NCBI RefSeq assembly: GCF_963921235.1
Contig: NC_086129.1
Location: forward strand, 5,890,001 to 5,954,000
DNA length: 64,000 bases
Reading direction: 5' to 3'
Origin: Mobula hypostoma
Taxonomy: Eukaryota
A program made the position numbers and the translations under genes. This document shows positions 5,137 to 59,959 of the stretch, in pieces. How positions within the stretch are numbered: the first letter of the stretch is position 1; each line of letters begins with the position of its first letter. The notes under the pieces are model-generated. The model did no database searches, was not told where the DNA came from, and saw only the letters and a program-made list of their open reading frames with translations.

Positions 5137-5484
5137 AATGTGTTTGCTACAGGTGATTCATACTTTTTCCATCCCCGGGTATTTATGTGCTTTCTAATTG
5201 CATGTTTGTAATGAACGTTGTTTGAAAATTCATTCATTGTATTCTTCTTTGATGCAGCTCAGGCAATTTACTTGTGCATTCGCAAACAAAAGACAGTGCA
5301 CACGCATTGAAACCAGACAATTTGTCAGAACTCGTACGATTTTAATACAAACAAAAAAACTAATGTCTACAGTAGTAGCTATACACAATTCAAAATAATA
5401 CCTTTCATCCACTAAACAAGCCGATCTCTGTGAAAGAGTGGAACCACAGATCCGACAATATCACACAGCCTCTTTTCTATCTAT

Positions 5485-6690
5485 CCATCTCTCTCCCTCT
5501 CCCTCTCCTACTCCCCCTCCACCTCCCCCTTCCCATCCCCATGTCCCTCTCTCTCTCTCTCTCTTCGTCCCTCCCTCTCCCTCTCTCTGTCTCTCCCTTT
5601 CCCTCTTTCTCTCTCTGACCCCCCTCTCCCCTATCTCTCCCTCTCTCTCTCCCTCTCTCTCTCCGTCTCCCTCACGGTGTCTTAGTCGCTTCATTATCTC
5701 TCTGTCTCTCCCTTTCCCTCTTTCTCTCTCTGACCCCCCTCTCTCTCCCCTATCTCTCCCTCTCTCTGTCTCTCTCTCTCCGTCTCCCTCACGGTGTCTT
5801 AGTCGCTTCATTATCTCTCTGTCTCTCCCTTTCCCTCTTTCTCTCTCTGACCCCCCTATCTCTCCCTCTCTCTCCCTCTCTCTCTCTCTTCGTCCCTCCC
5901 TCTCCCTCTCTCTGTCTCTCCCTTTCGCTCTTTCTCTCTCTGACCCCCCTCTCTCTCCCTCTCTCTCCCTCTCTCTCTCTCTTCGTCCCTCCCTCTCCCT
6001 CTCTCTGTCTCTCCCTTTCCCTCTTTCTCTCTCTGACCCCCTCTCTCTCCCCTATCTCTCCCTCTCTCTCTCCCTCTCTCTCTCCGTCTCCCTCACGGTG
6101 TCTTAGTCGCTTCATTATCTCTCTGTCTCTCTCATTCCATTTTCTCTCTCTCTCTCTCTCTCTTCGTCCCTCCCTCTCCCTCTCTCTGTCTCTCCCTTTC
6201 CCTCTTTCCCTCTCTGACCCCCCTCTCTCTCCTCTCTCTCTCCCTCTCTCTCTCCGTCTCCCTCACGGTGTCTTAGTCGCTTCATTATCTCTCTGTCTCT
6301 CTCATTCCATTTTCTCTCTCTCTCTCTCTCTCTTCGTCCCTCCCTCTCCCTCTCTCTGTCTCTCCCTTTCCCTCTTTCTCTCTCTGACCCCCCTCTCTCT
6401 CCTCTCTCTCTCCCTCTCTCTCTCCCTCTCTCTCTCCGTCTCCCTCACGGTGTCTTAGTCGCTTCATTATCTCTCTGTCTCTCTCATTCCATTTTCTCTC
6501 TCTCTCTCTCTCTCTTCGTCCCTCCCTCTCCCTCTCTCTGTCTCTCCCTTTCCCTCTTTCCCTCTCTGACCCCCCTCTCTCTCCTCTCTCTCTCCCTCTC
6601 TCTCTCCCTCTCTCTCTCCGTCTCCCTCACGGTGTCTTAGTCGCTTCATTATCTCTCTGTCTCTCTCATTCCATTTTCTCTCTCTCTCCC
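5485..6690. repeat. CT-rich minisatellite/low-complexity array
   Basis: Anchor ctcacggtgtcttagtcgcttcattatc at 5671, 5788, 6092, 6262, 6444 and 6626, embedded in (CT)n. Confidence 0.9.
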
Positions 6691-7577: not shown

Positions 7578-9649
7578 CTAACGTTTCATGCGTTTCAGAA
7601 TCCGATTCATTGGGTATTTCACCACATTCTTCAGTTCCTCTCGGAATTTGCTCTGGGTCAGGACGTAAATACACGTGTTGGTGCAGGAACTGAGAACCTG
7701 CAGCATTTCCGCTGCCTGCTGTCTGATGTAACGGGGATCCGTGACAGAATAAACAGAACTCCTTGAAATCCGTCTATAGATAAAAAATGCCACGTATGTT
7801 GCCCACAACACTATGAAACAACCGGTTATGCTGAAGAGCAAAACGATAGATTTGTGTTGGTTCTCCATCTCCCGGTCCCTGTCATTCTCTCCACTCTTTT
7901 GTCCCCGGAGCCCCCTGCGGGCTCGACTGGCCGCTAGAATCCGCCTGACAGTCAGGATATTGAACAGCAACATCAGAAAGAATGGGACACAAGGGGTTAA
8001 AATTAGGTGAAACATCTCAATTGCCGCCCATGAGGGAGAGTTTGTGAAGCTTGGTGTATAAACACAATCCCAGGGAACACCATCAATTATTTCTCCAGGC
8101 CAGTATGCAAAGCCCCAGGGGACAGTCACCAAACCGGCCAGCACACTCACTGTCCCGATAACCACAGCCGCCGTTCTCTCGGTGCAATATCTTGTTTTCA
8201 GCTTCTCACAGCAAATAGCCACAAATCGATCGACGGTGAAAGCGACAGTCAGCCAGACTGAGGCCGCAGTGCTCGCAGAAATCAACCATAGACAGAGTCT
8301 GCACACAGGAGTGATGAACAGGAATGATCATAAGACCATAAGACCATAAGACAAAGGAGCAGAAGTAGGGCATTCGGCCCATCGAGTCTGCTCCGCCATT
8401 TTATCATGAGCTGATCCATTTTATCCTATTTAGTCCCACTGCCCCGCCTTCTCACTATAACCTTTGATGCCCTGGCTGCTCAGATACCTATCGATCTCTG
8501 CCTTAAATACGCCCAATGACTTGGCCTCCACTGCTGCCCGTGGCAACAAATTCCACAGATTAACTACCCTCTGACTAAAAAAAATTCTTCGTATTTCTGT
8601 TCTGAAAGGGCGCCCTTCAATCCTGAAGTCATGCCCTCTCGTACTAGACTCCCCCATCATGGGAAACAACTTTGCCACATCCACTCTGTCCATGCCTTTT
8701 AACATTCGAAATCTTTCTATGAGGTCTCCCCTCATTCTTTTAAACTCCAAGGAATACAGTCCAAGAGCGGACAAACGTTCCTCATATGTTAACCCTCTCA
8801 TTCCCAGAATCATTCTCGTGAATCTTCTCTGTATCGGGGAAAATAAATCATTACAGTCCACCCCAGCAGCGGATCGAAGATAACGGCCAGGAGATCGGCC
8901 ACTGCCATTCCCACCAGGTAGCGAGTGACACATTTGGCGAGACCGCACTTTCCCCGGGACAGGATCACAATCGCCACCAAGTTCGCTGGAATAGAGACAG
9001 GGAACAGCAAGTTGAGAAAATACTGAGCAGAAGCGAATGCGGCAGTTTGAGGGGATCCTGTAATATTTCCACTTTATTGTTGCATTTAGCGCTGGGATGG
9101 TCGAGTGAGGGCGCAGAGCTGGCGGGAATAGAGAAGAAGTTTACACAATAAAAGTCAATATGATCTGAATACTGATTCCTTACTGATGAGCGAAATGTGA
9201 CGTGGCAACGGAAAGATAAAACTGGGTAACTACCTCCTCAGAATTAATACTAGATGGGTGGTCTGGATGAAATGAATACATCCGGATGCTAATGGCTGGA
9301 TTCCTCCAGTAGACAAGACCAAAAGCAGAGAGCCGAAAAATTCATTATTAATTACAAAACGCCGGAAGAACGCTGCCTGACCCGCTCAGTCCCGCAGAAA
9401 GTGGCCAAATTGTTTTTAGATCTAAATCCCATCATCTACAGTCCCGGTGTTTCCTCTCCATTCCTGAAATGCGGAATACTGGAACTGGAATGAGAGAGTT
9501 AAAACCAGCGGAAGAATCAAACACAACATCGGAATTAAACTTCAACCTCCACCCACGGCAGCTGATACTGCGGCTTACCGGGAATTAAAAAACACAGAAA
9601 TAAAAGGATAGTAAACTTCTCGAATCCGCCAGATGACTGGATACACCAT
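7578..9649 (-). pseudogene. GPR139-like orphan GPCR, gene A (disabled). Exon 1 9649-9579; exon 2 8985-7578, interrupted by CR1
   Basis: Exon 1 MVYPVIWRIREVYYPFISVF... with a gtaagc donor is 71 nt versus 70 in gene B (extra T in a T6 run). Acceptor tccag|CG AAC. Exon 2 has 7TM sequence with DRF and NTCIY. A 503-bp CR1 sits at 8330-8832. Removing both lesions gives a 323-aa ORF. Confidence 0.9.
8330..8832 (-). mobile_element. 5'-truncated CR1 LINE inserted in exon 2 of gene A
   Basis: QRRFTRMILGMRGLTYEERLSALGLYSLE...FFSQRVVNLWN; (tcttatgg)n tail; flanked by GAT repeats (atc at 8327-8329 and 8833-8835). Confidence 0.92.
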
Positions 9650-12128: not shown

Positions 12129-15100
12129 ATGAAAAAGTTCTACTTACCTTCTTACCTGTGAACAGCCTGCAGAGGAAATGAACATGACTGATCAAGCTAT
12201 TGGTAAATCAGTTGAGCAACTCAAGGTAGAGCGAACGATAGCAAAAAGATTATTTTCGCGTCTGGTCAACAGTATTACCAGCACCTATGAAGACGTGTCT
12301 GAAGAGGAGCTCAGAGTCAGTTTCAATAAACTCACAACAGAAGCTGAGAAAGTCATGGAAGCCAGTGATGATGCGGAGGCCGGATTCACTGCAGAACTGG
12401 AGGCAGAGCTGAGCGCAGAGGAAGTAGCTGTGTTAACTGAACAGCAAAAAGCCGACCTGGCAAAGACGGCAAACGAGTGTGAGTTGAAACTAAAGAAGGT
12501 CGGAAGAAGAAGCCTAATCCAGGTGACACTTTGGACCAACTTTGGAAATGTTGAGTTGTTCACAGCACTACAAACAGCAGAGGATGAGTGTGAAGACGTC
12601 GCTGCTGTACAACACGATGGCAACCAGGAAGCGTGTGAGTTCATGCTTAACCACCCGCAAGGACTGGTAAGGACAGCGAAGGAGGTGCATGGACCGTAGA
12701 AACGATGGATCCCGCCAGGGGATCAGAAGGACCTTCAGAATCACCTAAAGGGGCTCGAGCTGCAGATCACCAAGTTGGTTTCCAAGAAGGCCCACTTCAT
12801 GCAGGCAGGGAGAAAGGTGGATGATGAAAGACTAACAACGACGGCGTGGACTTTTCCTCTAATTTTCCCACGCCAGCCATCAGATTGAAACCGACAGCCC
12901 TTCCCAAGTTTACTGGCAGAAAACGTGATTTTCACAGGTGGAGAAAGGACTGGAAGGTACTCCAGAAGCAGGGAGAGCCGACCGGTTCATTGGAGGTGAA
13001 AAAAGGTTCAACTACTGGACAGTCTTGACGACAAAATCAGACAAGACCTTCGCCTTACTACTTATAACACCGCAGATGACATCTTCCGTGTTCTCGAAAA
13101 CCGCTATGGAAATCAAACGTGCATTGCTATTGAAATAGTGGAAGAGTTACAGTAAATGCCAGCTGTCAGAAATCATCAGTCACTGAAAATGGTGGAATTA
13201 TTTCAAGCTGTGGAGAAGGCACTTCAAGACTTGAGTGACGTTGGAGACACGGGTGCTGTCAAAAACCCGCTGGTGACAAAATGAATTGAAAGTAAACTTC
13301 CAGAAACTCAAAAAGGAATGGCTAGTCTATGTCACTGACTCGAAAAATGCTGTGGCACCAGATAATCGGTTTGACAGTCTTTTGGAATTCCTCAAAGGGC
13401 GAGAGAACATATATGAGCAGCTCGAGCAACTGAGGGATGAAGAGCCAAGTAGAAGAGAAACCAGGGCTGAGCCAAGACATGCCAGAACCAAGTCCCCCAA
13501 GTCAGGCGACGACCATGCAGGGTTTGTCGTCTGCGGTGATGGAAAGCACAAAAGGAAGCTCTACTTTTGCAAACAGTTTCGAGCGCTAAAGCTACCAGAG
13601 AAAAAGGCCGCAGTAAGAAAGTTGGGGGCATGCAAGAAGCGTCTCGAGGTTCATGATGACAGTTCATACTGCAAACCAGCTTATCTGTGTAAAAACTAAG
13701 ACTGCAAGGATGGGACACTCCTGAGCATCACTACTATCTGTGCCCCAATGCCGAAATAAAGAAAAGCAGCGCAGGTCACAAAAAGAGCAGATTTGGTCCA
13801 GAAGACGATAAAGGCAGGAAGAAATATACAGAGGATCAAGAGGAGTTCTTCAGCAAACTTTCACCAGAATTGTCCAAACAATGTCGCGATGTATTTTCAA
13901 ACGCTGCAGCCAGAGCCTTCAGCACTGTGAAAGATAAATCGGGCCTTCTGATGGCAAGTGGATTGTAAAAGCTGCCAGTGATTATGATGCTTCTTCTGGT
14001 CACAGCTAATCCTGGACAAAAAATGGGGACGTTAATTGACTTGGCTTCAGACACCAATTATATAACCCACAAGGCTGCAAGCAGACTGAACCTCAGAAGT
14101 GAGGAAATCGCTCTCGTTGTCCATGGAGTCGGGGGGATGAAGGTTCAAGTGGAGACAAAGCGGTACCTTCTAAAAATCAGAGTGAACACTCCCAAGGGCA
14201 CTCTCAAATCACACCAATTGGTTTGTTATGGACTAGGCAGCATTGAAAATGTCTACAAATATGTGACACCGAAGCAACTGCAGAAATTCTTCCCAGACAT
14301 GCAGTTTGACGAACTTGTGAGACCCAGAGGAATAAGTTTACTCATAAGTCAAAGAGAAGGTCAGCCAGCGCCTCAGAGAAGCAGAGCTGTTGGAGACCTC
14401 GTGCTGTGGGACGGACCACTGGGGAAGATGTTCGGAGGAGCACACCCTGGTCTCTTTGAGGAGCTGTCTGTGTTTGCTCACATGTACAAGATACATTTTG
14501 CAAGGTCAATGAGAGCGGCGCTGTGATGTAGGAGGAGCTCACCGGCAGAGTCCCAGAGCAACTTCCGCCAAACAAACAGGATGACATCAATCTCCAGGAG
14601 TCAGGTAGGTCAGGCACTAACCTGGTCTTCCGAGAGTGGTGGAAGTGGGATAGTATTGGCGCAGCATGCGAGCCAAAATGCGGGGGTTGTCTTTGCGGAA
14701 ACTGTCAGCCAGGCGGCAAAGGAATGACTCTTGCTGAGGAGAGGGAACTTGAAGTTGTAAGAAGAGGCCTCACCTATGTCACAGAGAACCACCACAGAAA
14801 GGAAGCACATTGGCACCCCAGATATTCTTGGTTAGAGGACCCAGCTTCCTTGCCAAACAATAAAAGAACAGTTGAGGCAACATTTCTCAGGACGGAAAAG
14901 CAACTAGCCAAAGAACCCGAGTGGAAAGCTGCCTACACTGCTCACGTGCATGACATGGTCGATCGTGGGGCTGCAATGAAATTGTCCAAATACACCGTCA
15001 TCAACTGGAACGGGCCAGTCTGGTACGTGAGTCACCTTGTTGCTCCGAATCCGCACTCTGTCACGACCCCAGTGAGACTCGTGTGGAACAGCAATGTGAG

Positions 15101-16328
15101 CTTCAACGTCCTGCTAATGAAAGGTCCAGATATCCTCAACCAGATTCGCACTGTCCTACTGAGATTCAGGGGTGCAGTATACGCTGCTCTGGTGACATAA
15201 AAAGGATGTACAATTCGGTTTGGTTGGAAGATCGAGAAGTGCACCTGCACAGGTTCCTCTGGCGAGACTCCGAGGACGAGGAGCTGGGGGAATATGCAAT
15301 CACAAGAGTGAACATCGGAGATAAATCAACAGGGTGCATTGCACAGTTAGCAATGCGCGAAACTGCTAACCTCCCTCCTTTCACCCACCTCAAAGAGGAG
15401 CGGCAGATGCTCCAGCACGACAGCTACGTTCATGACATTGTCACACCCCACAACAACCTTGACCAGCTGAAATCCATCACAGCGAATGTGGAGCAGACTC
15501 TAAAGGCCGGAGGTTTCAAGCTCAAGCCTTGGATCTTTTCTGGGCAAAGTGGGAGGAAAGAGTGCAAAGACAAGCTGGAGAAGTTCAAGGCAGAAGCCAT
15601 GGTCTTGCCAAACCAAATGCACGATGATGACAACAAGGCACTTGGCCTGGGCTACATAGTAAAGGAGGACAAACACCATGTCATGATTTCAATCAACTTC
15701 TCGAAGAGAAAGCAAACAATGAGACTTGGCCAAGACCTTCTACAGGAGCAAGTCAGAGACCAGACGTCAAACCCCCTGACAAGAAGAGAACTGCTCAGCC
15801 AAGTATCAGGGCAATATGACCCAGTTGGCCTGGTAACTCCTGCTGAGCAGAAGGGATCTATTCTGGTACGAAGGGCGTTCCAAGAGGCAAAGGGCGAAAG
15901 ATGTCCAGTCAAAGACACATTGGACATCGCACCCTCAGATGGCCTCAGGGGGGATGCAATTAAGCTCTTCGAAGAGTACGTTCAACTTGGCAAGGTAAAG
16001 TTCTCCAGTGCACTGACTCCCCCATGCGTCACTAAGGAACCCTGGGCAATCACGTTCTCTCATGGAAACTAGCACGCCTACGGAGCAGTGATGTACCTAA
16101 GGTGGTACTCGGACCGCACGCTGTTTATTTCTAAATTCCAAAACAAACTGTGACAAACTAATAGGCACCTTGCTACTAAACTATTGTTCCTTCAGCAAGG
16201 TCAACCGTCCTGAAACCAATCCAGATTTTAAATTTTCCTTATTCAAAGGTTCAGAAACAACACGTTTTCCACTCTCTCAATAAAATTTACCTCACCAGTG
16301 ACAGGTACAGAATGAACCCAACACTCTT

Positions 16329-17096: not shown

Positions 17097-17665
17097 CCTC
17101 TGTCCTCTTTCTCCTCTCTCCCCCTCTCTCTCTCTTCCAACAATTTACCTCATGACTGTCTTTCTCTCGTTCATTTCCAGCCGCAATGCACACATTCGTC
17201 TGCCAATTTTCAGTATTTTTTATATTATTTAACATTCTGCCCATTCCTTTACAGACTGAAATATTTATTCTCGATTTCGTTGGACCTTTGATAGATTTAC
17301 GATGCCCATTAAAGACTGTTACATCAGCGACATGACACACAAAATGCTGGAGGAACTCAGCAGTGTTCCTTGTGTTGCCCCGGATTTCCAACATCTTCAG
17401 ATTTTCTCGTGTTTGTACACTAGCAACGTGCTCATTTTACCGTTTCCATCCTGATCTGGGTCTCTCTATTGTATCTTTGTTCAAATCTGTGTTTGTGTAT
17501 TTCGAATTGTATTGACTTCATTACTTATATCCTTCATCTACATGAGAAGTAAAAATTTTTACGTTATGTCTCTGTCTAAATATGCAATTTATGGTTACTT
17601 ATAATACAGATTATGTTTAACAGGGCAGTCACTATAACATAGAAATACATTTGTGCAATAGTTTC

Positions 17666-17686
17666 TGTGTGTGTGTGTGAGTGTGT

Positions 17687-17718
<32 letters not shown>
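17666..17718. repeat. (GT)n microsatellite
   Basis: Direct reading. Confidence 0.95.
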
Positions 17719-18051
17719 CCAGGAAGAAGCTGAAGGACTGAAGGACGGTACAAAATGGGAAACTGCAGGGACAGAGGTAGGGATCGGCCAGCGTCGCAGG
17801 TCTCCCTTCAGAGATGAATAATTAAAGCCAGCAAAAAGATGAAATCTGTAAGTGTAGCTGCTTCGTGACAAAGCTCAGTCTTTGAAAGTAAATCTACCGG
17901 CCCATTTCCACCAGAGACACTGTTGAGGTAACGCTAAAGAATTTTGATTTATTTGTCTCCAATCGCCCCAATATTTACAATAGAATTAAAGTAACTGGAA
18001 CTAAGAAAGTTAGTGAGGTGTATAACTGTATCTCTGGAGACCGATCCTCTG

Positions 18052-18058
18052 TATAAAT
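18052..18058 (+). promoter_or_regulatory. TATA box of gene B
   Basis: TATAAAT 85 bp upstream of the ATG, with an initiator-like catcag about 25 bp downstream; flanks conserved in gene A. Confidence 0.6.
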
Positions 18059-18136
18059 CAGGGCCGCTTGGAATGCATCAGCTGTCTGCCGGAGCTGTGA
18101 ATACAGGAGCAACAGAAATCACAGATTCTCACTGAA

Positions 18137-18206
18137 ATGGTGTATCCCGTCATCTGGCGGATAGAAGGCGTTTACTATCCTTTTATTTCAGCCTTTGGGA
18201 TCCCCG
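18137..18206 (+). CDS. GPR139-like orphan GPCR gene B, coding exon 1 (MVYPVIWRIEGVYYPFISAFGIP)
   Basis: ATG, 70 nt, phase-1 donor G|gtaagc. Resembles the VYY...GLPAN start of TM1 in GPR139. A homologous exon is present in gene A. Confidence 0.85.
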
Positions 18207-19575
18207 GTAAGCCGCGGTGTCAGCTGCCGTGGGTGGATGTTGGAGTTTAATTCGGATGATGTGATTGATTCTGCCGCTGGTTTAAACTCTCACATTCCAG
18301 TGCCGGTATTCCGCATTTCGGGAATGGAGTGGAAACACCGGGACTAGAGATGCTGGGATGTCTATCTGAAAACAAACCGCTGCAGGAATTCAGCGAATCA
18401 GCCACTTTCTGTGGGACTGAGCGGGTCAGGCAGCGTTCTTCCAGCGGGTTGTGATTAATAATGAGATGTTCGCCTCTCTGCTTTTGGTCTTGTCGAAGCT
18501 GCACTTCACTTGCAGATATTGTGTTTATACAGCCCGCGGAGCTCATGCCAATTGATCGTCTGTATTTGAATGTGAGTGATTGTCTACTTAGGAGCAACAA
18601 TCAAACCATCGACTGCAGTAACACTGCAGGAAATGTGTTGTAACACGAAACAGTTGTGGATTTTAATAACTGTGTGCGATATGACGGAATATAAAGCAGA
18701 TGATGGACAACACAATGAATTTGATGCTGAGTGAATTAACACAACCGAGGTGGTGCTTCATAGCCATCAATACTGTGAAATGTATTGTATCGTATCTACA
18801 CCTGACATTGTTCCGGACATCTGACTACGACACCGAGTTTGAATTCCTCTCCCCTCCTCCCTTGATGGGTTCAGTGGGAGGCGTCATGTCTGCCTGTGAG
18901 GTTGCGTCAGGCTGCGCTGTATTTGTTGGAATCAGTCAATGTTCTGTTGTAAAGTCAGTGAGTTGGCAAATGTTGAAATAGGAAACAAACTCGGAGAATG
19001 CTGGAAACACTGAGCCCCAAGCAGCTGGTATGGGAAGAGAAACCGGTTAACACTTGTGTCAGGGGTCTCTCGGAGAACAGTTCTGAAAGAGAGATACTTT
19101 AACTAATTTCCACATATTTTGTTTTGTCTGGATGAGTGTTTCCAGCATTTCCTGTTTTTGTTCCGTCTTTCGGCTGTTCTGTCGCTTACAGGGATCTCCA
19201 TGGAAGTTGTTGATTGTCTAATGGAAGAATCCCGCCATCAGCGTCCGGATTTATTCATTTCATCCAGACGAGACGCAGAAGGTACCGATAGAAATTGTTC
19301 CATCAAGTATTGGCCCTGAGGAGGTAGTTACCCAGTTTTAGCTCTCCGCTGTCATTTCACATTGAGGAAATCAGTGAGGGAACCGTATTCAGACCATATT
19401 GACTTTATTTTACTGTGTAAACTCCTTCTCTGTCCCGGCCAGCTCTGCGCCCTCTCTCGACGCTCCCGCCGCTAAATGTAACAATAAAGTGGAAATATCA
19501 CAGGATCCCCTCAAACTGCCGCATTAGCTTCTGCTCTGTAATTTCTCAACTTGCTGTTCCCTGTCTCTCTTCCAG

Positions 19576-20483
19576 CGAACTTGGTGGCGATTGTGATCCT
19601 GTCCCGGGGAAAGTGCGGTCTCGCCAAATGTGTCACTCGCTACCTGGTGGGAATGGCAGCGGCCGATCTCCTGGTCGTTATCTCCGATCCGCTGCTGAGG
19701 TGGACTGCTCAGATTTATTTTCTCCGATCATTCCTGTTCATCACTCCTGTGTGCAGCCTCGGTGAATGGTTGATTTTTGCGAGCACGGCGGCCTCAGTCT
19801 GGCTGACTGTCGCTTTCACGGTCGATCGATTTGTGGCTATTTGCTGTGAGAAGCTGAAAACAAGATATTGCACCGAGAGAACGGCGGCTGTGGTTATCGG
19901 GACAGTGAGTGTGCTGGCCGGTTTGGTGAGTGTCCCCTGCGGATTTATATATGGGCCTGTGGTAATAATTGATGGTGTTCACTGGGGTTGTGTTGCTACA
20001 CCGAGCTTCACAAACTCTCCCTCATGGGCGGCATTTGAGATGTTTCACCTCATTTTAACCCCTTGTCTCCCATTCTTTCTGATTTTACTGTTCAATATTC
20101 TGACTGTCAGGCGGATTCTAGCGGCCAGTCGAGCCCGCAGGGGGCTCCGGGGACAAAAGAGTGGAGAGAATGACAGAGACCGGGAGATGGAGAACCGACG
20201 CAAATCCATCGTTTTGCTCTTCAGCATAACCGTTAGTTTTATATTGCTGTGGGGAACACAAATGGTATTTTCCATCTATAGACGGATTTCAATGAGTTTT
20301 TTTTATTCTGTCACGGATCCCCGTTACATCATAAGACACACATCGGACATGCTGCAGATTCTCAGTTCCTGCACCAACACGTGTATTTACGCCCTGACTC
20401 AGAGAAAGTTCCGAGAGGAACTGAATAATGCGTTGAAATACCCACTGAATCAGATTCTGAAACTCTTGAAGCATAAGAAATAA
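19576..20483 (+). CDS. GPR139-like orphan GPCR gene B, coding exon 2; spliced join(18137..18206,19576..20483) gives an intact 325-aa 7TM protein
   Basis: Polypyrimidine tract and tccag acceptor; ANLVAIVIL, LVGMAAADL, SVWLTVAFTVDRFVAIC, TM5 LTPCLPF, TM7 SSCTNTCIY, helix 8 KFREEL; no stops. Confidence 0.92.
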
Positions 20484-20583
20484 ATGTTGTAAAGTATTAC
20501 AATTCAGCTGCCTTCATGCTCCCTATTCTATCCCCCACTTGTGGGGAAATGGAAACAATGTGATGAACAGAGTTACAAAACAT

Positions 20584-20800
20584 ACACGAGAAAATCTGCA
20601 TCCGCTCGAAATACAAAACAACACACACAAAATCAGATCCTGATGAAGGGTCTCGCCACGAAACCTCGACTGTTTTCATTTTTCCTCACAGAAAATGCTA
20701 GAGGAACTCAGCAGGCCAGGCAGCATCTATGAAAAAGAATAAACTTTCGACGTTTCGGGCCGAGACCCTTCTTCAGGTTCCAGTTAACTTTTTACTCTTT
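20584..20800. mobile_element. Penelope-derived short repeat containing two opposite-facing hammerhead-like motifs (about 20636-20672 + and 20745-20780 -)
   Basis: cctgatgaagggtctcgccacgaaacctcgactg (+) and cctgaagaagggtctcggcccgaaacgtcg (-); homologous copy at about 7400-7570 beside gene A. Confidence 0.7.
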
Positions 20801-22099
20801 TCCCGTTTTGTGTGCGTTGCCTTAGTTACAAAATAACTGTTTACAGCTGATCTCGACGGCATCACTGGCCTCACTATCCCAGAGAAATCCCCTTTGCTCC
20901 TCTCGTCCCACCCTGTTATATTGAATCTTGGGGTGAACCTGTTTCCCCTGCTTCCCGGTTCTGACTAAACTGCCTGAACTTGTGGTATATTTTCGTCTCT
21001 ATCAACCTCTCCTGATCCCGTCAATACCCGTCCTTTCTTTCATGATCTTTTGTTTCTCCTCCTCTATACCTGCAGATTTCCCTTCTCACTGTCAACTTGA
21101 ACTATCTTTCTGTAAGAGTATTTTCCTGTTTTCCATTTCAAGACAAAGTCGCGTCACCTTCACTTGTTTCTCTGTGAGAGATGGAGATGCGAGTGCTGAG
21201 GGCGCGAATGAGACATCGCGAGGAAAGGGCGCGCGGGAGAGCACGTGAGTGCTGAGGGCGCGAATTAGACATCGCGAGGAAAGGGCGCGCGGGAGAGCAC
21301 GTGAGGGAGAGGGCGCGAGGGAGATGATGCCACGGAGATGACGCCACGGAGATGACGCTGGAGTGAGGGTAATGCAGAGGGCGGGAGGGAGAGGGAGCGG
21401 GCGATGGTGCGCGCGAGTGAGAGCGACAGGAGGAGACATCGCGAGGGCGCGAAGGTGAGCACGTGAGGGAGAGCGGGCCGGGGATAGGACACGAGGAAGA
21501 TGTCGCAAGATTGAGCGCCAGGGAACGGGAGTGTGAGAGAGGCAGAGAAAATAGAGTGAGAGAACAGAGAGATAGTGATGCGACTGAGACATCGTGAGGG
21601 AGTCAGGGAGAGAGAAAGGGTGGGGGGAGAGAGAGAGAGAGGGAGAGGAGCGGGAGGGAGGGGGACAGAGAGAGAGGGAGGGGGAGAGGGAGAGGGAGAG
21701 AGAGAGAGAGATAAATAGATGGTTAGATAAATAGTCAGATAGGTAGAAAAAAACAGTCCGAGGAACATTGCCGGATCTGTGGTTTTACTCTTTCACAGAG
21801 ATCGGCTTCTTTAGTGATGATAAGTATTCTTTTGAATTATGTACAGCTAACTACTGTAGACATTAGTTGTTTTTTGTTCTATATTAAAATCCTACGAGGT
21901 CTAACAAATTGCGTAGTTTCAATATGTGTGCAGTCTCCTTTGTTTGCGAATGCATCAGTAAATTTCCTGAGCTGAATCAAAGAAGAATACAATGAATGAA
22001 TTTTCATACAATGTTCATTACAAACAGGCTATAAGAAATCACATAAATACACGGGGATGTAAAGATATGAATCACACGTAGCAAACACTTTAGCGGGGT

Positions 22100-28439: not shown

Positions 28440-31056
28440 GAAAAAATAGATAAAGATCCCACAGAATGTGTACAATATAGGCCTATAACTTTGTTGAATG
28501 TAGATTCCAAGATTTTTTTCTAAAATATTAGCGACCAGATTGGAAAAAGTATTGCCTCAAATTATTTTTGTTGATCAGATGGGATTTATTAAAAATCGTT
28601 GTTCTTTTTTTTTAATATTAGGAGATTAATGAAGATTGTTTATACTCCTTCACGAAGAACTCCAGAACGTGTCATTTCACTAGATGCTGAGAAAGCGCTT
28701 GACAGGGCTGAATGGACGTATTTATTTAGTGTGCTTGAAAAATCTAATTTTAGTCCGACGTTTATATCTTGGACTAAATTAATATACCTTACCCCTTCGG
28801 CGTCGGTATTTACCAATAATCAGAGATCTCCTATTTTTCAGTTGTTTCGCGGCACCAGGCAAGGTTGTCCTCTTAGTCCACCGCTGTTTAATATTGCTTT
28901 AGAACCATTGGCCATTGCTATTCGTGAATCAACTAATATATTTGTTGTCACCCGTAGGAATGAAACACATAAGTTATCACTGTACGCTGATGATTTATTA
29001 TTATTTATTTGTAACCCCGAAAAATCTATTCCGGCACTCTTATTCTTGCTTGATGAGTTTAGTAATTTTTCGGGCTATAAATTGAACCTTAATAAAACTG
29101 AACTCTTCCCTTTAAATGTGCAGGTTCCAATTTATAGATGTTCACCATTCAGACTGGTTAATGATTATTTTACTGATCTGGGTGTTAAAATTACTAAGGA
29201 GCATAAGGATTTATTTAAGTATATTATTTTACCTTTAATTGATCAAATTAATCACATTTTTATTAAATGGTCCCCATTGTTTCTCTCAATGCTTGGTCGA
29301 ATTAACGCTATTAAGATGATTCTCCGACCAAATTCTTTATACTTGTTTCAAGCATTACCAATTTTTATTTCCAGATCCTTTTTTGATACTTTAGGTTCTA
29401 AAATCTCTTCATACATATGGCAGAACAAACGTCCTAGATTAAGTAAAATGTATTTACTGAAGCCTAAAGTGGTTTGGCTTTACCAAATTTTAGATTTTAC
29501 TGTTTGGCAATTAATATCCGATATTTAATATTTTGGACACAAGATTTGGATATAACTTTACGCCCACAATGGGTAAACCTGGAATGTAAATCTATACAAG
29601 AGTTTTCTTTGACTTCCATTTTAGGGACATCTTTACCATTTGTTAGTTCTAAATTAAATGAACAAATGGTTAATCCAATAATTAAACATAAAATACGAAT
29701 ATGGTTTCAATTTCGTAATTTTTTTGGCTTGATCCAATTTATTTTATCAAGCCCTATTACGTCTATTTTTTTTTCTTTCAACTTCTATTATAGATCAAGC
29801 TTTTTAGGTATGGAAAACGAAGGGTATATTTAGCTTTCGTGATCTATTTTGGAAAACAGTTTCATATCGTTTGAACAGTTATCTAATAAATATAATTTGC
29901 CTAGATCTCACTTTTTCAGATAATTGCAAATTGGAAACTTTTTAAATATTAATTTACCCACATTTCCAACTTCACATCCAATTGATATTACGGAAAAATT
30001 CCAAGATTAAATCCTTTTCAGAAGGGTTTAATAGCATTCATTTATGATTTGATTATGAAAATAAATTCAGGAATATCTGATAAAATTAAGACTGAATGGG
30101 AAAGAGAACTCCAACTTCCTTTACCTATAGAAAAATGGGGAAATTTTTCAATTAGTTAACATATCCTCTTTATGTGCTAAACATACATTGACACCATTTA
30201 AGGTGGTGCATAGGGCACATATGTCTAAAGACAAATTAGCTCGTTTCTATTCACGTATAAGCCCAATTTGTGATAGATGCCATTCTGAAGTTGCTTCCTT
30301 GACTCATATGTTTTGGTCCTTCCCTTTCTTACATGAATATTGGAAAGATATCTTTGATATTATTTCTACCGTTTTGCATATTAATTTACAACCGCACCCT
30401 GTTTCTGCAATATTTAGGATACCAATGATGGATGATAGTTACTTCTCCCCTTCAGCCTGTCAGATGATTGCTTTTTTAACATTAATGGCTAGAAAATGTA
30501 TCTTATTGAACTGGAAAGAGGTCAATCTCCCTACTACATTTCAATAGTTTTCTCAAACTATATCTTGTTTAAATTTAGAGAAAATTAAAAGTAGCACCTT
30601 CGACCCTTCGATTAAATTTGAAGAAACTTGGAGAGCATTTATTCAACATTTCCATATGATGTAGTTTGACCTTCTCGAATCATTTTTTTAAAACTTAAAA
30701 TACACGTATAGAGGAGCGGAGTTAACGACATTAATGTTTTTATCCAATGTAATATGTTAACCTGTATTTTATTTTTCTATAGTTCTGTTTTTAGTTTTAT
30801 TTCGTTTAGGTTAATATTGCTTATTTTAATTAATATGTCTTTTTTTCTTTTCTAATTTGTTTTTTTTTAGATTTTTTCTCATTCGTCCTTCTACTATGTT
30901 TAAATATATTTAGAGTTTGGGAAGCTTTATACATCTGTATTATTACCAATGCTATATTTGCAATGTCAATTATTAATAATGTAATCCCAATCTCTGTTTA
31001 TTAATAGTGTTGTTATGTTTATAATTTTGAAAATTAATAAAAAGATTGGAAAATAA
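28440..31056 (+). mobile_element. L1-clade LINE ORF2 3' half, frameshifted
   Basis: YRPITLLNVD, ISLDAEKALD, GTRQGCPLSP, LYADDLLL; C-terminal CDRC...LTHMFW; T-rich 3' UTR, AATAAA and an A-rich end. Confidence 0.9.
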
Positions 31057-32846: not shown

Positions 32847-35800
32847 ATGTTGGATCGGTACGAGCGTGTGGCGAAAATGTTGTACGTGTTCATTGCCGTC
32901 ATTGGAGTTCCTGGTGAGTGAGCACAGCAATTCATGTTTGGTATTTCTGTGTGTTAACCGGCGTGAACCTGTTTATAACCATTTTATAAGCTTCCCACTT
33001 GATGACCATTACAAAAATAACCGATAGAGATATCGATCCCGTCAGCTCAACACTCTCATGCTCAATCCGTATTGATAAGTGGAATTAAGCCTCTGTCTGT
33101 CTTTTAACTCACGGGATCGACTCGAACGATGTTCTTTCCTTTAATAACACCATGTACATATTTATCCCAGTGTAGGGGAGGGGAATCTCCCCGTAAAGGG
33201 GTTGACTGCGGGGGGGGGGGGGGGGTGGTTACATTGTGAAGTACACTGTATAGAACATAGAACATAGAATAGTACAGCACAGTACAGGCCCTTCGGCCCA
33301 CAATGTTGTGCCGAACCTCAAACCCTGCCTCCCATATAACCACCACCCCCACCTTAAATTCCTCCATATACCTGTCTAGTAGTCTCTTAAACTTCACTAG
33401 TGTATCTGCCTCCACCACTGACTCAGGCAGTGCATTCCACGCACCAACCAGTCTCTGAGTAAAACACCTTCCTCTAATATCCACCTTGAATTTCCCACCA
33501 CTTACCTTAAAGCCATGTCCCCTTGTATTGAGCAGTGGTGCCCTGGGGAAGAGGCGCTGGCTATCCACTCTATCTATTCCTCTTATTAGCTTGTACACCT
33601 CTATCATGTCTCCTCTCATCCTCCTTCTCTCCAAAGAGTAAAGCCCTAGCTCCCTTAATCTCTGATCATAATGCATACTCTCTAAACCAGGCAGCATCCT
33701 GGTAAATCTCCCCTGTACCCTTTCCAATGCTTCCAAATCCTTCCTATAGTGAGGCGACCAGAACTGGACATAGTACTCCAACAGTGGCCTAACCAGAATT
33801 TTATAAAGCTGCATCATTACATCGCGACTCTTAAACTCTATCCCTCGACTTATGAAATCTAACACCCCATAAGTTTTCTTAACTACCCTATCCACCTGCG
33901 AGACAACTTTCAGGGATCTGTGGACATGCTCCCCCAGATCCCTCTGCTCTTCCACACTACCAAGTATCCTGCCATTTACTTTGTACTCTGCCTTGGAGTT
34001 TGTCCTTCCAAAGTGTACCACCTCACACTTCTCCGGGTTGAACTCCATCTGCCACTTCTCAGCCCACTTCTGCATCCTATCGATGTCTCTCTGCAATCTT
34101 CGACAATCCTCTACACTATCTACAACACCACCAACCTTTGTGTCGTCTGCAAACTTGCCAACCCACCCTTCTACCCCCACATCCAGGTCTTTAATAAAAA
34201 TCACGAAAAGTAGAGGTCCCAGAACAGATCCTTGTGGACACCACTAGTCACAATCCTCCAATCTGAATGTACTCCCTCCACCAGCACCCTCTGCCTTCTG
34301 CAGGCAAGTCAATTCTGAATCCACCTGGCCAAACTTCCCTGGATCCCATGCCTTCTGACTTTCTGAATAAGCCTACAGTGTGCAACTTTGTCAAATGCCT
34401 TACTAAAATCCATATAGATCACATCCACTGCACTACCCTCATCTATATGCCTGGTCACCTCCTCAAAGAACTCTATCAGGCTTGTTAGACACGATTTGCC
34501 CTTCACAAAGACATGCTGACTCTCCCTGATCAGACCATGATTCTCTAAATGCCCATAGATCCTATCTCTAAGTATCTTTTCCAACAGCTTTACCACCACA
34601 GAAGTAAGGCTAACTGGTCTATAATTACCCGGACTATCCCTACTACCTTTTTTGAACAAGGGGACAACATTCGCCTCCCTCCAATACTCCGGTACCATTC
34701 CCGTGGACAACGAGGACATAAAGATCCCAGCCAAAGGCTAAGCAATCTCTTCCCTCGCCTGGTGGAGCAGCCTGGGGAATATTCCGTCAGGCCCCGGGGA
34801 CTTAACCGTCCTAATGTATTTTAACAACTCCAACACCTACTCTCCCTTAGTATCAACATGCTCCAGAACATCAACCTCACTCATATTGTCCTCACCATCA
34901 TCAAGTTCCCTCTCATTGGTGAATACCGAATAAAAGTATTCATTGTGTATCTGAGATATTGGTCAGAGAGAACCCCTGGTCCTGTGTTTCACCCCTCCCT
35001 GTGGAGATCACAGTCGGATCCCGCTGACTGTTGGTCAATAATTGGGTCCGATCACCTGGATCAGAGTCCTTGGATCTGCTGACACGAGTTATCGAATTGA
35101 ACTGCGCTGTGGAATTAATCCTTAACGGACGCGCTCAGCCTCCGGTTACTAAGTTGTCGCTACTTTCCCCCTGAGATCCGTCGTAAATCGGGGCAGCGTT
35201 TCGTCATGAAGACGGTCTCGACCCGCATCAAGAGTTTGTTCAATTCCATGGATGCCGCCTGCCCTGCTGAGTTGCACCAGCATTTTGTGCGTGTTCCTCC
35301 CCTCTGTATCGCTTCTCGGCCCCCTCAGATGCTGAGTTTCCGGAGACCTGGTGAGTCACGGTTAAATCGGTGAAACCGGGCCCATCAGCGACTGGAATCG
35401 GGATCAGCACCGATTGTTCTTCTTCATGTCGCTCGTTTTTATCGCCGACGATTGCCGACTCATCATCTTATCTGCACACTGAAGAAGGCAGTTTAGAGAC
35501 AGCGTGACCCGTGTCTATTGTTAGATCAGTAGCCGTTCACAGAGTCTAGCACTCCTGAGGTTCAGCTGAAGCCCGATCCCGGGTCAATTCCCGGAAAATA
35601 AGTTCAGTTATGCCCACTGTCTGCCCTCTCTCTCTGTCTCCCCCTCTCCAGTGAATTTAGTGGCGATTGTGCTCCTGTCCCGGGGAAAGTGCGGCCTCTC
35701 TACCTGCACCACTCGCTACCTGGTGGCCATGGCAACGGCCGATCTACTGACCATCGTCACACAGGTCATTTTGTATCGAATTAATGTGTATTACTTCCCC

Positions 35801-36661
35801 TGGAGTTTTCTGAGCATCACCCCTGTGTGCAGTGTTATTTAAGTCCTGACGTTCGCAGCCACAGACCGTTCTGTCTGGTTCACCATCACATTCACCTTTG
35901 ATCGGTTTGTCGCCATTTGCTGCCAAAAGGTGAAAACAAAATATTGCACCGGGAAAACTGCGGCTGTGGTTCTGACAACAACCGGCGCAATGTGCTTTCT
36001 GAAACACGTCCCCCGATACTTCACACTCGAACCCAGAGTGATCATCGGCGACGCACTGTGGTTCTGTGTGATGAAAGACAATTATTTCACTGACCCCGGG
36101 TGGGTAGGATATGACTGGTTCGATACGGTTTTAACTCCGTTCCTCCCTTTCGCTGGGATCCTGCTGCTCAACGCTCTGACAGTCAGGCACATTGTAGTGG
36201 CCAGTCGGGTCCGTAAGAGGCTGAAGGGTCAGAGCAAGGGGGAGAACCGCAGTGACCCGGAGATGGAGAGCAGGAGGAGGTCTGTGGTTTTACTCTTCAC
36301 CCTCTCCGGCAGCTTCGTCCTCCTGTGGATGACATACCTTGTAAATTTCATTTATTATCAGGTCTCAGGAAAAGGATTCGATTTCAATGATTCTGAACGG
36401 ATCTTTCAGCTCGTCGGGTTTTTGCTGAGGGATTTCAGCTGTTGCATCAACACATTTATTTACGCGGTGACTCAGTCAAAATTTAGGGAGCAGCTGATCA
36501 GCGCGGTGAAATATCCGGTCACCTCGGTGCTTCAGTTGATTAATAATGAGTACAGTGTCTCCAGTCCGGACTGTGGGTCCTCACAATCTCCGCCTGATCT
36601 CCCAGATATTAATCCCGGGCGGATTGTTCCATCGACCGGCAGGTACGGGGCATTAGGATAG
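32847..36661 (+). pseudogene. GPR139-like orphan GPCR gene C: join(32847..32913,35652..36661) with one in-frame TAA at 35840-35842
   Basis: Exon 1 MLDRYERVAKMLYVFIAVIGVP with G|gtgagt donor; acceptor ctccag|TG AAT; NLVAIVLLSRGKCGL, TFTFDRFVAICC, CINTFIY, KFREQL; frame continuous across the stop. Confidence 0.88.
33250..34944 (-). mobile_element. Young 5'-truncated CR1 LINE (RT domain) in the intron of gene C
   Basis: YRPVSLTSVV, YMDFSKAFDKV (34309..34734); KFADDTKVGG...FTQRLVGAWN (33104..34204); (ttctatg)n tail. Confidence 0.93.
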
Positions 36662-38159: not shown

Positions 38160-39080
38160 ATTAGATTAGATCAACTTTATTGCCATTGTGCAGAGTACAG
38201 ATGCAAAGCCAATGAAATGCAGTTAACATCTGACCAGAAATGCAAAGAATAGTGTTATTTTCAAAATAGCTGCAAATAAAAAAGTGCTACAGCACACAAA
38301 TATAACAGTACTGAGACAGTACAATATGGGTGCAATACTGCTTAGCGCTGTGATGTGAGGTTCAGCAGTGTCACAGCCTCAGGGAAGAAGCTCTTCCTGT
38401 GTCTGCTGGTGTGGGAGCGGAGGCTCCTGTAGCGCCTACCGGATGGAAGGAGAGTAAAAAGTCCATAGTTAGGGTGAGATGCATCCCCGATAACGCTTTT
38501 CGCCCTGCCCAGGCAGCGTTTATGGTAGATGTTCTTAATGTTGAGCAATTGGGTGCCGATAATCCGCTGGGCAGTTTTCACCACATGCTGGAGTGCTTTG
38601 TGGTCCCAAATGGGACAAGTGCCATACGACACTGAGATACATTCGGTGAGTATGCTCTCAATGGTACAGCGGTAAAAGTCCATCTGTATCCTGGGACAGA
38701 GGTGAGCTTTCTTGATACTCCACAGGAAATAAAGGCGCTGTTGTGCATTTTTCATCAGGATGGCGGAGTTCAGGGACCAGGTGAGATCCTCGGAAATGTG
38801 GACACCAAGGAATTTTAAGCTTGATACACGGTCCACTACAGTTCCGTTGATGTAGATGGGGATGTGAGTGTGACTCTTAGCATGCCTGAAGTCCACAATT
38901 ATCTCCTTGGTCTCCTGGGTGTTAAGGGCCAGATTGTTGTCGACACACCATGAGGCCATGTGCTGGACCTCGTCTCTGTAGTCCGTCTCGTCATCCCCTC
39001 TGATCAGGCCAACCACCGTGGTGTCATCTGCGAAGTCGATTATGGAGTTAGAACCATGTAGAGGAATGCAGTCATAGGTT
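38160..39080 (-). mobile_element. Rex1/Babar-like LINE 3' portion (RT C-terminus)
   Basis: FADDTTVVGLI...FLGVHISEDLTWS...FYRCTIESILT...LPSGRRYRSL. Confidence 0.88.
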
Positions 39081-39084
39081 TCAG

Positions 39085-59929: not shown

Positions 59930-59959
59930 CTGGGGGGAGAAGCAGAGAATTAGAGAGCG

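What the first reader, a model, noticed from the sequence alone, without database searches (positions are those of the whole stretch)
19690..20370. Mosaic divergence between A and B: frozen cytoplasmic half, hypervariable ligand-facing half
Seen: 50 consecutive residues from mid-TM3 through ICL2 and TM4 (19779-19928) are identical, with only two synonymous differences that I could find, and 37 residues across TM5-ICL3 are identical. Replacements cluster at the top of TM2 (GWTVM/RWTAQ), top of TM3 (RLCLWLIS/SLGEWLIF), ECL2 (WGFAYWPGE..PWDCVY/CGFIYGPVV..HWGCVA), top of TM6 (ATYVAFF/GTQMVFS) and ECL3-TM7 (RQQAAE/IRHTSD). Non-coding flanks are visibly more diverged than the frozen tracts. Inference: diversifying selection on the binding pocket plus segmental gene conversion of the G-protein-coupling face.
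Basis: partly seen in the sequence, partly recalled or inferred. Interest (0 to 1): 0.75.

Follow-up and report, generated by a model that had tools for sequence, protein, structure and literature searches.

The report
Ray receptor gene pair: conserved core, variable pocket
Two neighbouring copies of an orphan GPR139-like receptor gene in a devil-ray genome are identical in their inward-facing half and differ mainly in their outward, ligand-facing half; this is the usual pattern for an expanded receptor family, and one of the two copies is a recently broken pseudogene.

Summary
Copy A (minus strand) and copy B (plus strand) share a 50-residue identical tract at 19779-19928 with two synonymous differences. 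They also share a 37-residue identical tract at 20085-20195.

The gene models needed correction:
- The family has two coding exons. B is an intact 325-aa gene (exon 1 at 18137-18206, exon 2 at 19576-20483).
- A is dead. A 506-bp LINE fragment splits its exon 2 at 8832-8327, and exon 1 has a +1 frameshift.

- Replacement divergence is about 4-fold higher in the extracellular half than in the cytoplasmic half (dN 0.152 vs 0.040, P=5e-6).
- Across 120 homologues, the most variable helix positions match GPR139 ligand-contact positions.
- dN/dS in the variable half is 1.29, not significantly above 1, and replacement divergence does not exceed flank divergence.
- The frozen tracts are conserved family-wide, so purifying selection suffices. 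Tract 2 has normal synonymous divergence.
- Only a roughly 450-bp block at the 5' end of exon 2 shows weakly reduced silent divergence (corrected P=0.03).

Earlier scan notes report this expanded family elsewhere in the same genome.

The parts
18137..18206 (+). Copy B, coding exon 1: ATG plus 23 codons plus 1 nt, followed by a G|GTAAG donor
   Evidence: tblastn of a canonical family member hits here. The sequence and donor were read. It is 85% identical (28/33, E 1e-20) to the exon-1 part of the spliced Mobula birostris model P0138.
18207..19575 (+). Copy B intron (phase 1).
   Evidence: Intron-retaining shark models read GVP-GK..., which is the G|GTAAG donor.
19576..20483 (+). Copy B, coding exon 2 (TM1 from N1.50 to the stop codon). 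Together with exon 1 it gives an intact 325-aa ORF.
   Evidence: spliced translation without stops; Pfam 7tm_1 E 4.8e-23; 86% identity to annotated Mobula proteins.
19578..19658 (+). Identical run 3 (residues 25-51: TM1 end, ICL1, cytoplasmic part of TM2), with no nucleotide differences
   Evidence: Synonymous sites here are also conserved against the distant copy C (pS 0.27 vs 0.62 overall).
19659..19778 (+). Variable cluster 1: top of TM2, ECL1, top of TM3 (residues 52-91; 11 replacements)
19779..19928 (+). Frozen tract 1 (residues 92-141: mid-TM3, DRF motif, ICL2, TM4), with 2 synonymous differences
   Evidence: Near-invariant in 120 homologues.
19929..20084 (+). Variable cluster 2: top of TM4, ECL2 hairpin, top of TM5 (residues 142-193)
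   Evidence: (beta hairpin in the model).
20085..20195 (+). Frozen tract 2 (residues 194-230: cytoplasmic TM5 and ICL3), with 3 synonymous differences (pS 0.108, flank-like)
20196..20465 (+). Variable region 3: TM6 (positions 6.42-6.55), ECL3, top of TM7 (7.34-7.43), helix 8 and tail
19483..19927 (+). Block of lowest silent divergence between A and B: 8 differences in 186 silent sites (4.3%, against 13.5% overall)
   Evidence: Scan statistic with parametric null, corrected P=0.03.
9579..9649 (-). Copy A exon 1, 71 nt: one extra base relative to B puts exon 2 out of frame
8833..8985 (-). Copy A exon 2, first piece (up to the codon matching B residue 74/75)
8327..8832 (-). 5'-truncated LINE 3' end inserted in A exon 2, in the same orientation as the gene, with an octamer-repeat tail and a possible GAT target duplication
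   Evidence: Sequence read. Its ORF is 48% identical (E 6e-38) to the region after the RT domain of another LINE copy at 33104-34204.
7578..8326 (-). Copy A exon 2, second piece, open to its stop codon
17489..22093 (+). Duplicated segment, B side. It matches 10369-5135 on the other strand (A side). Non-coding divergence is JC 0.14-0.21.
35652..36661 (+). Copy C: a third, distant family member (about 70% nt identity, about 50% aa). Exon 2 has the same pyrimidine-CAG acceptor and an in-frame stop in TM3.

Best explanation
A and B are inverted local duplicates, about 10 kb apart, within a duplicated segment of at least 4.6 kb. They belong to a very large elasmobranch-specific family of class A receptors whose nearest named relative is GPR139.

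For most of the time since the duplication both copies were functional, and selection differed by region:
- The cytoplasmic core was under strong purifying selection. This core comprises the TM1 end, ICL1 and cytoplasmic TM2; the DRF motif, ICL2 and TM4; and cytoplasmic TM5 with ICL3. It is kept nearly invariant in the whole family, presumably for G-protein coupling and trafficking (inferred).
- The extracellular half was under little or no constraint. There replacements accumulated at about the neutral rate, concentrated at positions that line the orthosteric pocket in GPR139.

This gives identical tracts alternating with dense replacement clusters. Copy A was then inactivated recently by a LINE insertion in ECL1 and a +1 frameshift in exon 1, and it carries somewhat more derived changes. 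B remains an intact two-exon gene.

Gene conversion is not needed for the frozen tracts. At most one roughly 450-bp block at the 5' end of exon 2 may have been homogenised, or it may be constrained at the nucleotide level.
For: - Gene models: canonical family N-terminus and intron-retaining models; exon 1 found by tblastn and read with its donor; intact spliced ORF; match to the spliced Mobula model P0138.
- A is broken: LINE insertion and frameshift.
- Selection pattern: exon-2 dN/dS is 0.98 overall. The extracellular half has dN 0.152 and dS 0.118. The cytoplasmic half has dN 0.040 and dS 0.070, with dN/dS 0.33 when helix 8 and the tail are left out. The dN contrast has P=5e-6 and the dS contrast P=0.33.
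- Zero replacements in 252 non-synonymous sites of the three identical runs, P=5e-7 given local dS.
- The frozen tracts have near-zero entropy in 23 close and 97 distant homologues.
- A and B deviate at 6 and 5 of 124 conserved columns, against a family median of 4, so A's death is recent.
- Pocket positions are the most variable in the family (using contacts from PMC8807744).
- In a DNA run, paralogous contigs pile up on the conserved tracts and thin out on ECL2 and ECL3-TM7.
- A and B share rare derived residues (S40A, K120R, C139G, E141V, K224R), consistent with sister copies.
Against: - dS in the coding region (0.085 per site) is lower than flank divergence (0.153; P=0.0017). dS is lower in residues 25-141 than in 142-320 (0.033 vs 0.137, P=0.014 uncorrected). 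Some homogenisation or synonymous constraint therefore exists.
- Within that low-dS block the TM2/TM3-top replacements exceed local silent divergence, which could mean positive selection.
- With only two close DNA sequences, site-level selection cannot be tested.
- Transcription and splicing of B were not shown directly. No 18206-to-19576 joint was listed, and the 'RNA' runs are guesses.
- The protein tree does not recover A and B as sisters.
Confidence: 0.65

Rival explanations
1. One reading: positive diversifying selection on the binding pocket, together with segmental gene conversion that keeps the G-protein-coupling face identical.
For: - Replacement clusters hit positions 2.61, 2.65, 3.28, 3.29, 3.33, 6.51, 6.52, 6.55, 7.35-7.39.
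- dN/dS is 1.29 in the extracellular half.
- Dense multi-nucleotide codon changes occur in the top of TM7, TM6 and ECL2.
- A low-silent-divergence block ends exactly at the end of tract 1.
Against: - dN/dS is not significantly above 1 (P=0.49), and pN in the extracellular half (0.138) is no higher than the flank rate (0.153).
- For the A-B pair, pocket positions are not enriched over other extracellular-half helix positions (7/17 vs 19/70, P=0.38).
- The replacements run over 5-7 consecutive residues, so all helix faces are hit.
- Tract 2 has flank-like dS.
- A conversion tract is contiguous DNA and cannot follow a three-dimensional face.
- The tracts are conserved in other species too.
Confidence: 0.15
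2. One real A-B (or third-party) gene-conversion event of about 450 bp covers the last ~90 nt of the intron and exon 2 up to the end of TM4. This sits on top of ordinary purifying selection elsewhere.
For: - Silent divergence is 4.3% in 19483-19927 against 13.5% overall, corrected P=0.03.
- Four of the five rare shared-derived residues lie in this block.
- A and B are each other's unique best match in residues 97-141.
Against: - The block contains 11 replacement differences at the TM2/TM3 tops.
- The same 5' end of exon 2 has conserved synonymous sites even against the distant copy C (pS 0.27 vs 0.62). It also draws the deepest pile of paralogous contigs. Both suggest family-wide nucleotide constraint, for example splicing signals, rather than a pairwise event.
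- The significance is marginal.
Confidence: 0.3
3. Both copies are pseudogenes drifting neutrally, and the mosaic comes from patchy conversion with other paralogues.
For: - Overall dN/dS is 0.98.
- A is clearly broken.
- Stops lie upstream of 19576 if that stretch is read as coding.
- Many Mobula gene models of this subfamily have makeshift N-termini.
Against: - B has an intact 325-codon spliced ORF with GT-AG signals.
- The upstream stops lie in the intron.
- There are no replacements in 252 non-synonymous sites of the identical runs while synonymous changes occur there (P=5e-7).
- A and B are no more deviant at conserved columns than annotated family members.
Confidence: 0.05

Closest known systems
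Human GPR139 (and GPR142), class A orphan receptor; cryo-EM structures 7VUG-7VUJ
   Same: - It is the best-scoring solved structure by sequence (E 1.4e-12).
- Both are rhodopsin-type 7TM receptors with a short N-terminus and W6.48.
- The positions that contact agonists in GPR139 (2x57, 2x61, 2x62, 3x29, 3x32, 3x33, 6x51, 6x55, 6x58, 7x35) are the hypervariable ones in the ray/shark family.
   Different: - The relationship is distant (phmmer E 1.4e-12).
- It lacks the Arg at 6x51 that the paper calls unique and essential to GPR139/GPR142: B has Gln and A has Tyr.
- It has Thr rather than Phe at 7x50, and DRF instead of DRY.
- GPR139 is described in the literature as highly conserved across vertebrates, whereas this family is hugely expanded.
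Elasmobranch proteins annotated 'probable G-protein coupled receptor 139' (Mobula, Hemitrygon, Hypanus, Heterodontus, Heptranchias, Scyliorhinus, Rhincodon and others)
   Same: - 61-86% identity over the full length for most of the 120 listed hits (a few long models align at 52-53%; 1802 proteins have E<=1e-20).
- The same 324/325-aa architecture, the same phase-1 intron before N1.50, and the same invariant cytoplasmic motifs.
   Different: - B itself is not among the annotated proteins.
- A is a pseudogene.
- The batoid subfamily has a long intron (0.6-1.4 kb). Most automatic models miss its exon 1.
Lineage-expanded receptor families with a variable pocket and a conserved intracellular face (odorant receptors, TAARs, V1Rs, MRGPRs, formyl-peptide receptors)
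   Same: - Birth-and-death clusters with pseudogenes and interspersed retroelements.
- Replacements concentrated in the extracellular halves of TM2, 3, 5, 6 and 7 and in ECL2.
- An invariant DRY-region/ICL2/ICL3 core.

This comparison rests on general knowledge, not on a test done here.
   Different: - No expression site or ligand is known for this family.
- No significant dN/dS above 1 was shown here.

Membership tests
Class A (rhodopsin-like) GPCR, Pfam PF00001 | Match to 7tm_1 above the gathering score | tested here: met
   B 82.4 bits (cut-off 30.5), A 70.8 bits, C 38.7 bits.
Class A (rhodopsin-like) GPCR, Pfam PF00001 | Hallmark residues N1.50, D2.50, the C3.25-ECL2 Cys pair, D-R-Y/F at 3.49-3.51, W6.48, N7.49..Y7.53 | tested here: met
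   Read from the spliced B protein: N25, D54, C83/C162, D107-R108-F109, W249, N291..Y295. Thr replaces Pro at both 6.50 and 7.50.
GPR139/GPR142 orthologue | Arg at 6x51, which PMC8807744 reports only in GPR139 and GPR142 and as essential for activation | tested here: not met
   B has Gln252 and A has Tyr. The position is hypervariable in the family.
GPR139/GPR142 orthologue | Phe at 7x50 in place of the NPxxY proline | tested here: not met
   Thr292 in B and in A, within the family motif ..CTNTCIY.
GPR139/GPR142 orthologue | High sequence identity to vertebrate GPR139 | tested here: not met
   Only E 1.4e-12 to the human GPR139 chain of 7VUG. It is the nearest solved relative, not an orthologue.
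Elasmobranch-expanded GPR139-like family | Full-length similarity to annotated members, and conservation of the family's invariant columns | tested here: met
   86% identity to the best hit. B deviates at 5 and A at 6 of 124 columns that are at least 90% conserved; the family median is 4.
Elasmobranch-expanded GPR139-like family | Two coding exons: a 23-codon exon 1, a phase-1 intron, and exon 2 starting one codon before N1.50 | tested here: met
   Direct RNA support for B's junction was not obtained.
Gene-conversion tract | A contiguous stretch whose silent divergence lies significantly below that of the surrounding duplicated DNA | tested here: inconclusive
   The block 19483-19927 has 4.3% vs 13.5%, corrected P=0.03. 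Tract 1 alone: 2/40 sites, P=0.08. Tract 2: 3/27.7 sites, P=0.47.
Positive (diversifying) selection | dN/dS significantly above 1 in the candidate region | tested here: not met
   Extracellular half: dN/dS 1.29, Fisher P=0.49; pN 0.138 against flank 0.153. Site models could not be run because no paralogue DNA was obtainable.
Positive (diversifying) selection | Variable sites line the ligand pocket | tested here: inconclusive
   Met at family level: entropy at 17 GPR139-contact positions vs 70 other extracellular-half helix positions gives P=0.016 and 0.001. Not significant for the A-B pair (P=0.38). The 3D model was too poor to use (pLDDT 61).
Unprocessed pseudogene (copy A) | ORF-disrupting lesions in an otherwise homologous gene | tested here: met
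   A 506-bp LINE fragment with stops inside exon 2, and a +1 base in exon 1.

The most novel reading that the evidence does not exclude
The pair is a sample of an undescribed, elasmobranch-wide receptor repertoire. There are at least 84 distinct contigs at one conserved site in a single ray DNA run, and 1802 database proteins. The orthosteric-pocket positions of this repertoire are being diversified adaptively, which would make it a new chemosensory or other ligand-sensing GPCR family of cartilaginous fishes, with a fixed signalling core.
Probability: 0.25. Interest if true: 0.7.

Novelty: new member of a known kind. Interest (0 to 1): 0.33.

Why it matters
The mosaic itself is what any expanded class A receptor family shows, so it does not change understanding.

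Its value is as a clean, quantified example from a very large, unstudied elasmobranch receptor family. No paper in the searched library links GPR139-like genes with sharks or rays.

The corrected two-exon gene model matters in practice. Most automatic Mobula models of this subfamily miss the 70-nt first exon and invent N-termini, which would mislead counts of intact genes against pseudogenes and any selection analysis.

If the pocket hypervariability proves adaptive, the family would be a candidate sensory repertoire in a lineage known for few odorant receptors.

Tried and rejected
1. B first looked like a pseudogene, with a TAA at 19539 and no ATG in the supposed TM1. This was rejected once the family's intron was recognised.
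2. Paralogue DNA for PAML-type site models could not be obtained. The look-up of encoding contigs gave no DNA because the assemblies are too large, or had no record. The cluster members are all from the same NCBI assemblies. A metagenome scan found only an unrelated 40% match.
3. The AlphaFold2 model of the exon-2 product had pLDDT 61 and pTM 0.35. Only its secondary structure was used, and no pocket/lipid mapping in 3D was attempted.
4. Helical-periodicity tests of family entropy were not significant.
5. Read laying listed no exon 1 to exon 2 joint (113 further joints were not shown). The 'RNA' label of the runs is a guess, so the jump in depth at 19576 is compatible with RNA but equally with cross-species conservation of the exon alone.
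6. Polarising synonymous changes with copy C is unreliable because dS is 1.3, i.e. saturated.
7. Segment-wise nearest-neighbour ranking suggested mosaic ancestry. However, the rare shared-derived residues at 40, 120, 139, 141 and 224 fit simple sisterhood with homoplasy at hypervariable sites.
8. A global MAFFT alignment of the whole duplicated segment misaligned around the two insertions and was replaced by block-wise alignments.

Full report
**What is there**

The window carries three members of a class A GPCR family (Pfam 7tm_1). The best solved relative is human GPR139, at E 1.4e-12. A database search gave 1802 proteins with E<=1e-20. The best 120 are all elasmobranch proteins, mostly named 'probable G-protein coupled receptor 139'. 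The closest (76-86% identity) come from Mobula hypostoma, M. birostris, Hemitrygon akajei and Hypanus sabinus. Earlier scan notes call this genome a devil ray and report the family on other pieces of it.

- Copy B lies on the plus strand at 18137-20483.
- Copy A lies on the minus strand at 9649-7578.
- Copy C, a distant third member, lies at about 35652-36661 and has a stop in TM3.

**Gene models**

The canonical family protein is 324 aa and starts with a 23-residue segment of the type M-G-Y-P-V-I-...-G-V-P, followed by VNLVAIVILSRGK. Some shark models instead read GVP-GK... into a short retained intron, which is the translation of a G|GTAAG donor.

In the window, tblastn places that first segment at 18137-18205. 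The DNA there reads ATG, 23 codons, one further G, then GTAAG. Exon 2 begins at 19576, behind a pyrimidine tract and CAG. The spliced product is an uninterrupted 325-aa protein. Exon 1 and the 11 codons upstream are 85% identical to the spliced M. birostris model P0138, and exon 2 is 80% identical to it.

This stretch includes a TAA at 19539. B is therefore apparently intact.

A is not intact, for two reasons:
- Its exon 1 (9649-9579) has one extra base, which shifts the frame.
- Its exon 2 is split between the codons matching B residues 74 and 75 by a 506-bp insert (8832-8327) that ends in an octamer-repeat tail. The insert's ORF is 48% identical (E 6e-38) to the part after the RT domain of another LINE copy in the window.

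Apart from these lesions, A's exon 2 is open to its stop codon.

**The observation**

With the LINE removed, exon 2 of A and B aligns without gaps over 296 codons, with 51 residue differences.
- Residues 92-141 (19779-19928) are identical, with two synonymous changes.
- Residues 194-230 (20085-20195) are identical, with three synonymous changes.
- Residues 25-51 are identical at every nucleotide.

Random placement of the 51 differences gives runs this long with P=0.0014 and P=0.0002.

**The duplication**

A and B sit in inverted orientation inside a duplicated segment: B 17489-22093 against A 10369-5135. Non-coding divergence is 12-18% uncorrected, or JC 0.14-0.21.

A and B share five residues that are rare or absent in 41 close homologues: S40A, K120R, C139G, E141V and K224R. 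This fits sister copies. The protein tree is star-like and does not join them. In the hypervariable 3' segments, many other paralogues are closer to B than A is.

**Selection**

I split exon 2 a priori by Ballesteros-Weinstein position, anchored on B's own motifs, with helix limits checked against the model's secondary structure. NG86 results are as follows.

| Region | dN | dS | dN/dS |
|---|---|---|---|
| Whole exon 2 | 0.089 | 0.091 | 0.98 |
| Extracellular half | 0.152 | 0.118 | 1.29 |
| Cytoplasmic half | 0.040 | 0.070 | 0.57 |
| Cytoplasmic half without helix 8 and tail | 0.022 | 0.065 | 0.33 |

- The dN contrast between the halves is strong (P=5e-6). The dS contrast is not (P=0.33).
- dN/dS of 1.29 is not distinguishable from 1 (P=0.49).
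- Replacement divergence in the extracellular half (0.138 per site) is no higher than flank divergence (0.153).
- In the three identical runs there are 5 synonymous changes and 0 replacements over 252 non-synonymous sites (P=5e-7 at the local synonymous rate). This is purifying selection.
- These tracts are almost invariant in 23 close and 97 distant homologues from many species. The constraint is therefore family-wide and is not a property of this pair.
- In a DNA run of a related organism, thousands of paralogous contigs pile up on the conserved tracts and thin out on ECL2 and ECL3-TM7.

**Which lineage changed**

I polarised the changes with the close homologues. Eighteen replacements are derived in A, 10 are derived in B, and 23 fall at family-hypervariable sites, of which 21 are in the extracellular half.

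A and B deviate at 6 and 5 of 124 highly conserved columns, against a family median of 4. A's inactivation is therefore recent relative to the divergence, with only a modest excess of A-specific changes.

**Pocket or not**

The GPR139 agonist contacts are listed in PMC8807744. Seventeen of them map to helix positions in B.
- For the A-B pair, 7 of the 17 differ, against 19 of 70 other extracellular-half helix positions (P=0.38). Against all other residues the odds ratio is 3.7 (P=0.015).
- Across the family, entropy at the 17 positions exceeds that of the other 70 in both the batoid group (1.30 vs 0.71 bits, P=0.016) and the shark/skate group (2.04 vs 1.18, P=0.001).
- Nine of the 18 most variable helix positions are on the list.

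Variation is thus focused on the pocket at family level. This fits ligand diversification but does not prove positive selection. The A-B replacements also run over 5-7 consecutive residues in TM6 and TM7, so they are not confined to one helix face.

**Gene conversion**

- Synonymous divergence is 0.050 per site in tract 1 (2 of 40 sites, P=0.08 against the silent average of 0.135).
- It is 0.108 in tract 2 (P=0.47).
- It is 0 of 22 sites in the first run (P=0.04).

A scan of all silent sites along the duplicated segment (non-coding columns plus synonymous sites) finds one low block. This is 19483-19927, with 8 differences in 186 sites, at corrected P=0.03. The block includes 90 nt of intron and the variable TM2/TM3 tops, so it does not correspond to 'the cytoplasmic face'.

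The 5' end of exon 2 also has conserved synonymous sites against the distant copy C (pS 0.27 vs 0.62). It attracts the deepest pile of paralogous contigs. Nucleotide-level constraint near the acceptor is therefore an alternative to a pairwise conversion event.

Overall coding dS (0.085 per site) is below the flank value (P=0.0017). Some homogenisation or synonymous constraint cannot be excluded.

**Comparison with known systems**

The proteins are class A receptors but not GPR139 orthologues. They lack Arg 6x51 and Phe 7x50, which the structural paper singles out for GPR139.

They belong to the elasmobranch-expanded 'probable GPR139' family. The conserved-core, variable-pocket mosaic, the tandem or inverted local duplicates, the interspersed retroelements and the frequent pseudogenes are the standard birth-and-death picture known from odorant, TAAR, V1R and MRGPR families. 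That comparison rests on general knowledge.

Four literature searches found no paper that links GPR139-like genes with sharks or rays.

**Verdict**

The mosaic and its ligand-side location are real and family-wide. Diversifying selection is unproven. Gene conversion is unnecessary for the frozen tracts and only weakly indicated for one 5' block.
- New facts are the two-exon gene model, the intact state of B and the LINE-plus-frameshift death of A.
- Interest is moderate to low for the finding itself, and higher for the unstudied family it samples.

Noticed in passing
window 18080-18136 (and A 9706-9650): The ~57 nt upstream of B's ATG are conserved with shark and ray gene models. B reads S-C-L-P-E-L-stop-I-Q-E-Q-Q-K-S-Q-I-L-T-E in frame, against ..SECLPEL.FPGQQKSLLLTE before the Met in Heptranchias, Heterodontus and Narcine models. 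B has a stop in this stretch, so it is non-coding: a deeply conserved 5'UTR or promoter-proximal element of the family.
   Followed up: partly
database proteins P0001-P0024 and P0121-P0138 (Mobula, Hemitrygon): Most automatic models of the batoid subfamily join unrelated N-terminal sequence to the acceptor before N1.50, or start inside the intron (MPEIAALADAQYF...). Only P0138 carries the real 23-residue exon 1. Counts of intact genes based on these models will be unreliable.
   Followed up: partly
window 35652-36661 (+): Third GPR139-like copy (C): about 50% aa identity to the family, the same pyrimidine-CAG acceptor, an in-frame stop in TM3, and a C-terminal extension. No exon 1 was found upstream.
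   Followed up: partly
window 18495-19213 and 20484-20608; 20640-20700: B has a ~720-bp insertion in its intron and a ~125-bp insertion directly after the stop codon, both absent from A. The stretch at about 20640-20700 is a very high-copy repeat (depth about 136,000 in a DNA run, against a few thousand nearby).
   Followed up: no
window 5438-6106 and 21092-21768: CT-rich low-complexity arrays, which translate as PLSLSLS..., lie in the 3' flank of both copies and belong to the duplicated segment. The A side has about 900 bp extra (5623-6526).
   Followed up: no
window 59373-60239 (-): An ORF with PRY and SPRY domains (E 3.7e-17 and 2.6e-20): a B30.2 exon of a TRIM/butyrophilin-type gene.
   Followed up: no
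window 12178-16072 (+), 28599-29528 (+), 33104-34204 (-), 38342-41474: Several retroelement fragments lie between the receptor copies: Pao/BEL-type peptidase plus RT, LINE RT fragments, and an ORF with an ALKBH8_N-type match.
   Followed up: no
Read laying on window 18000-20700, run X1: At one conserved exon-2 position (19623), 84 distinct contigs of a single DNA run cover the site at 80% likeness or more, and nearly all read T where B (and A) have G (Ser in the family, Ala in A and B). This suggests on the order of a hundred related copies in that genome.
   Followed up: no
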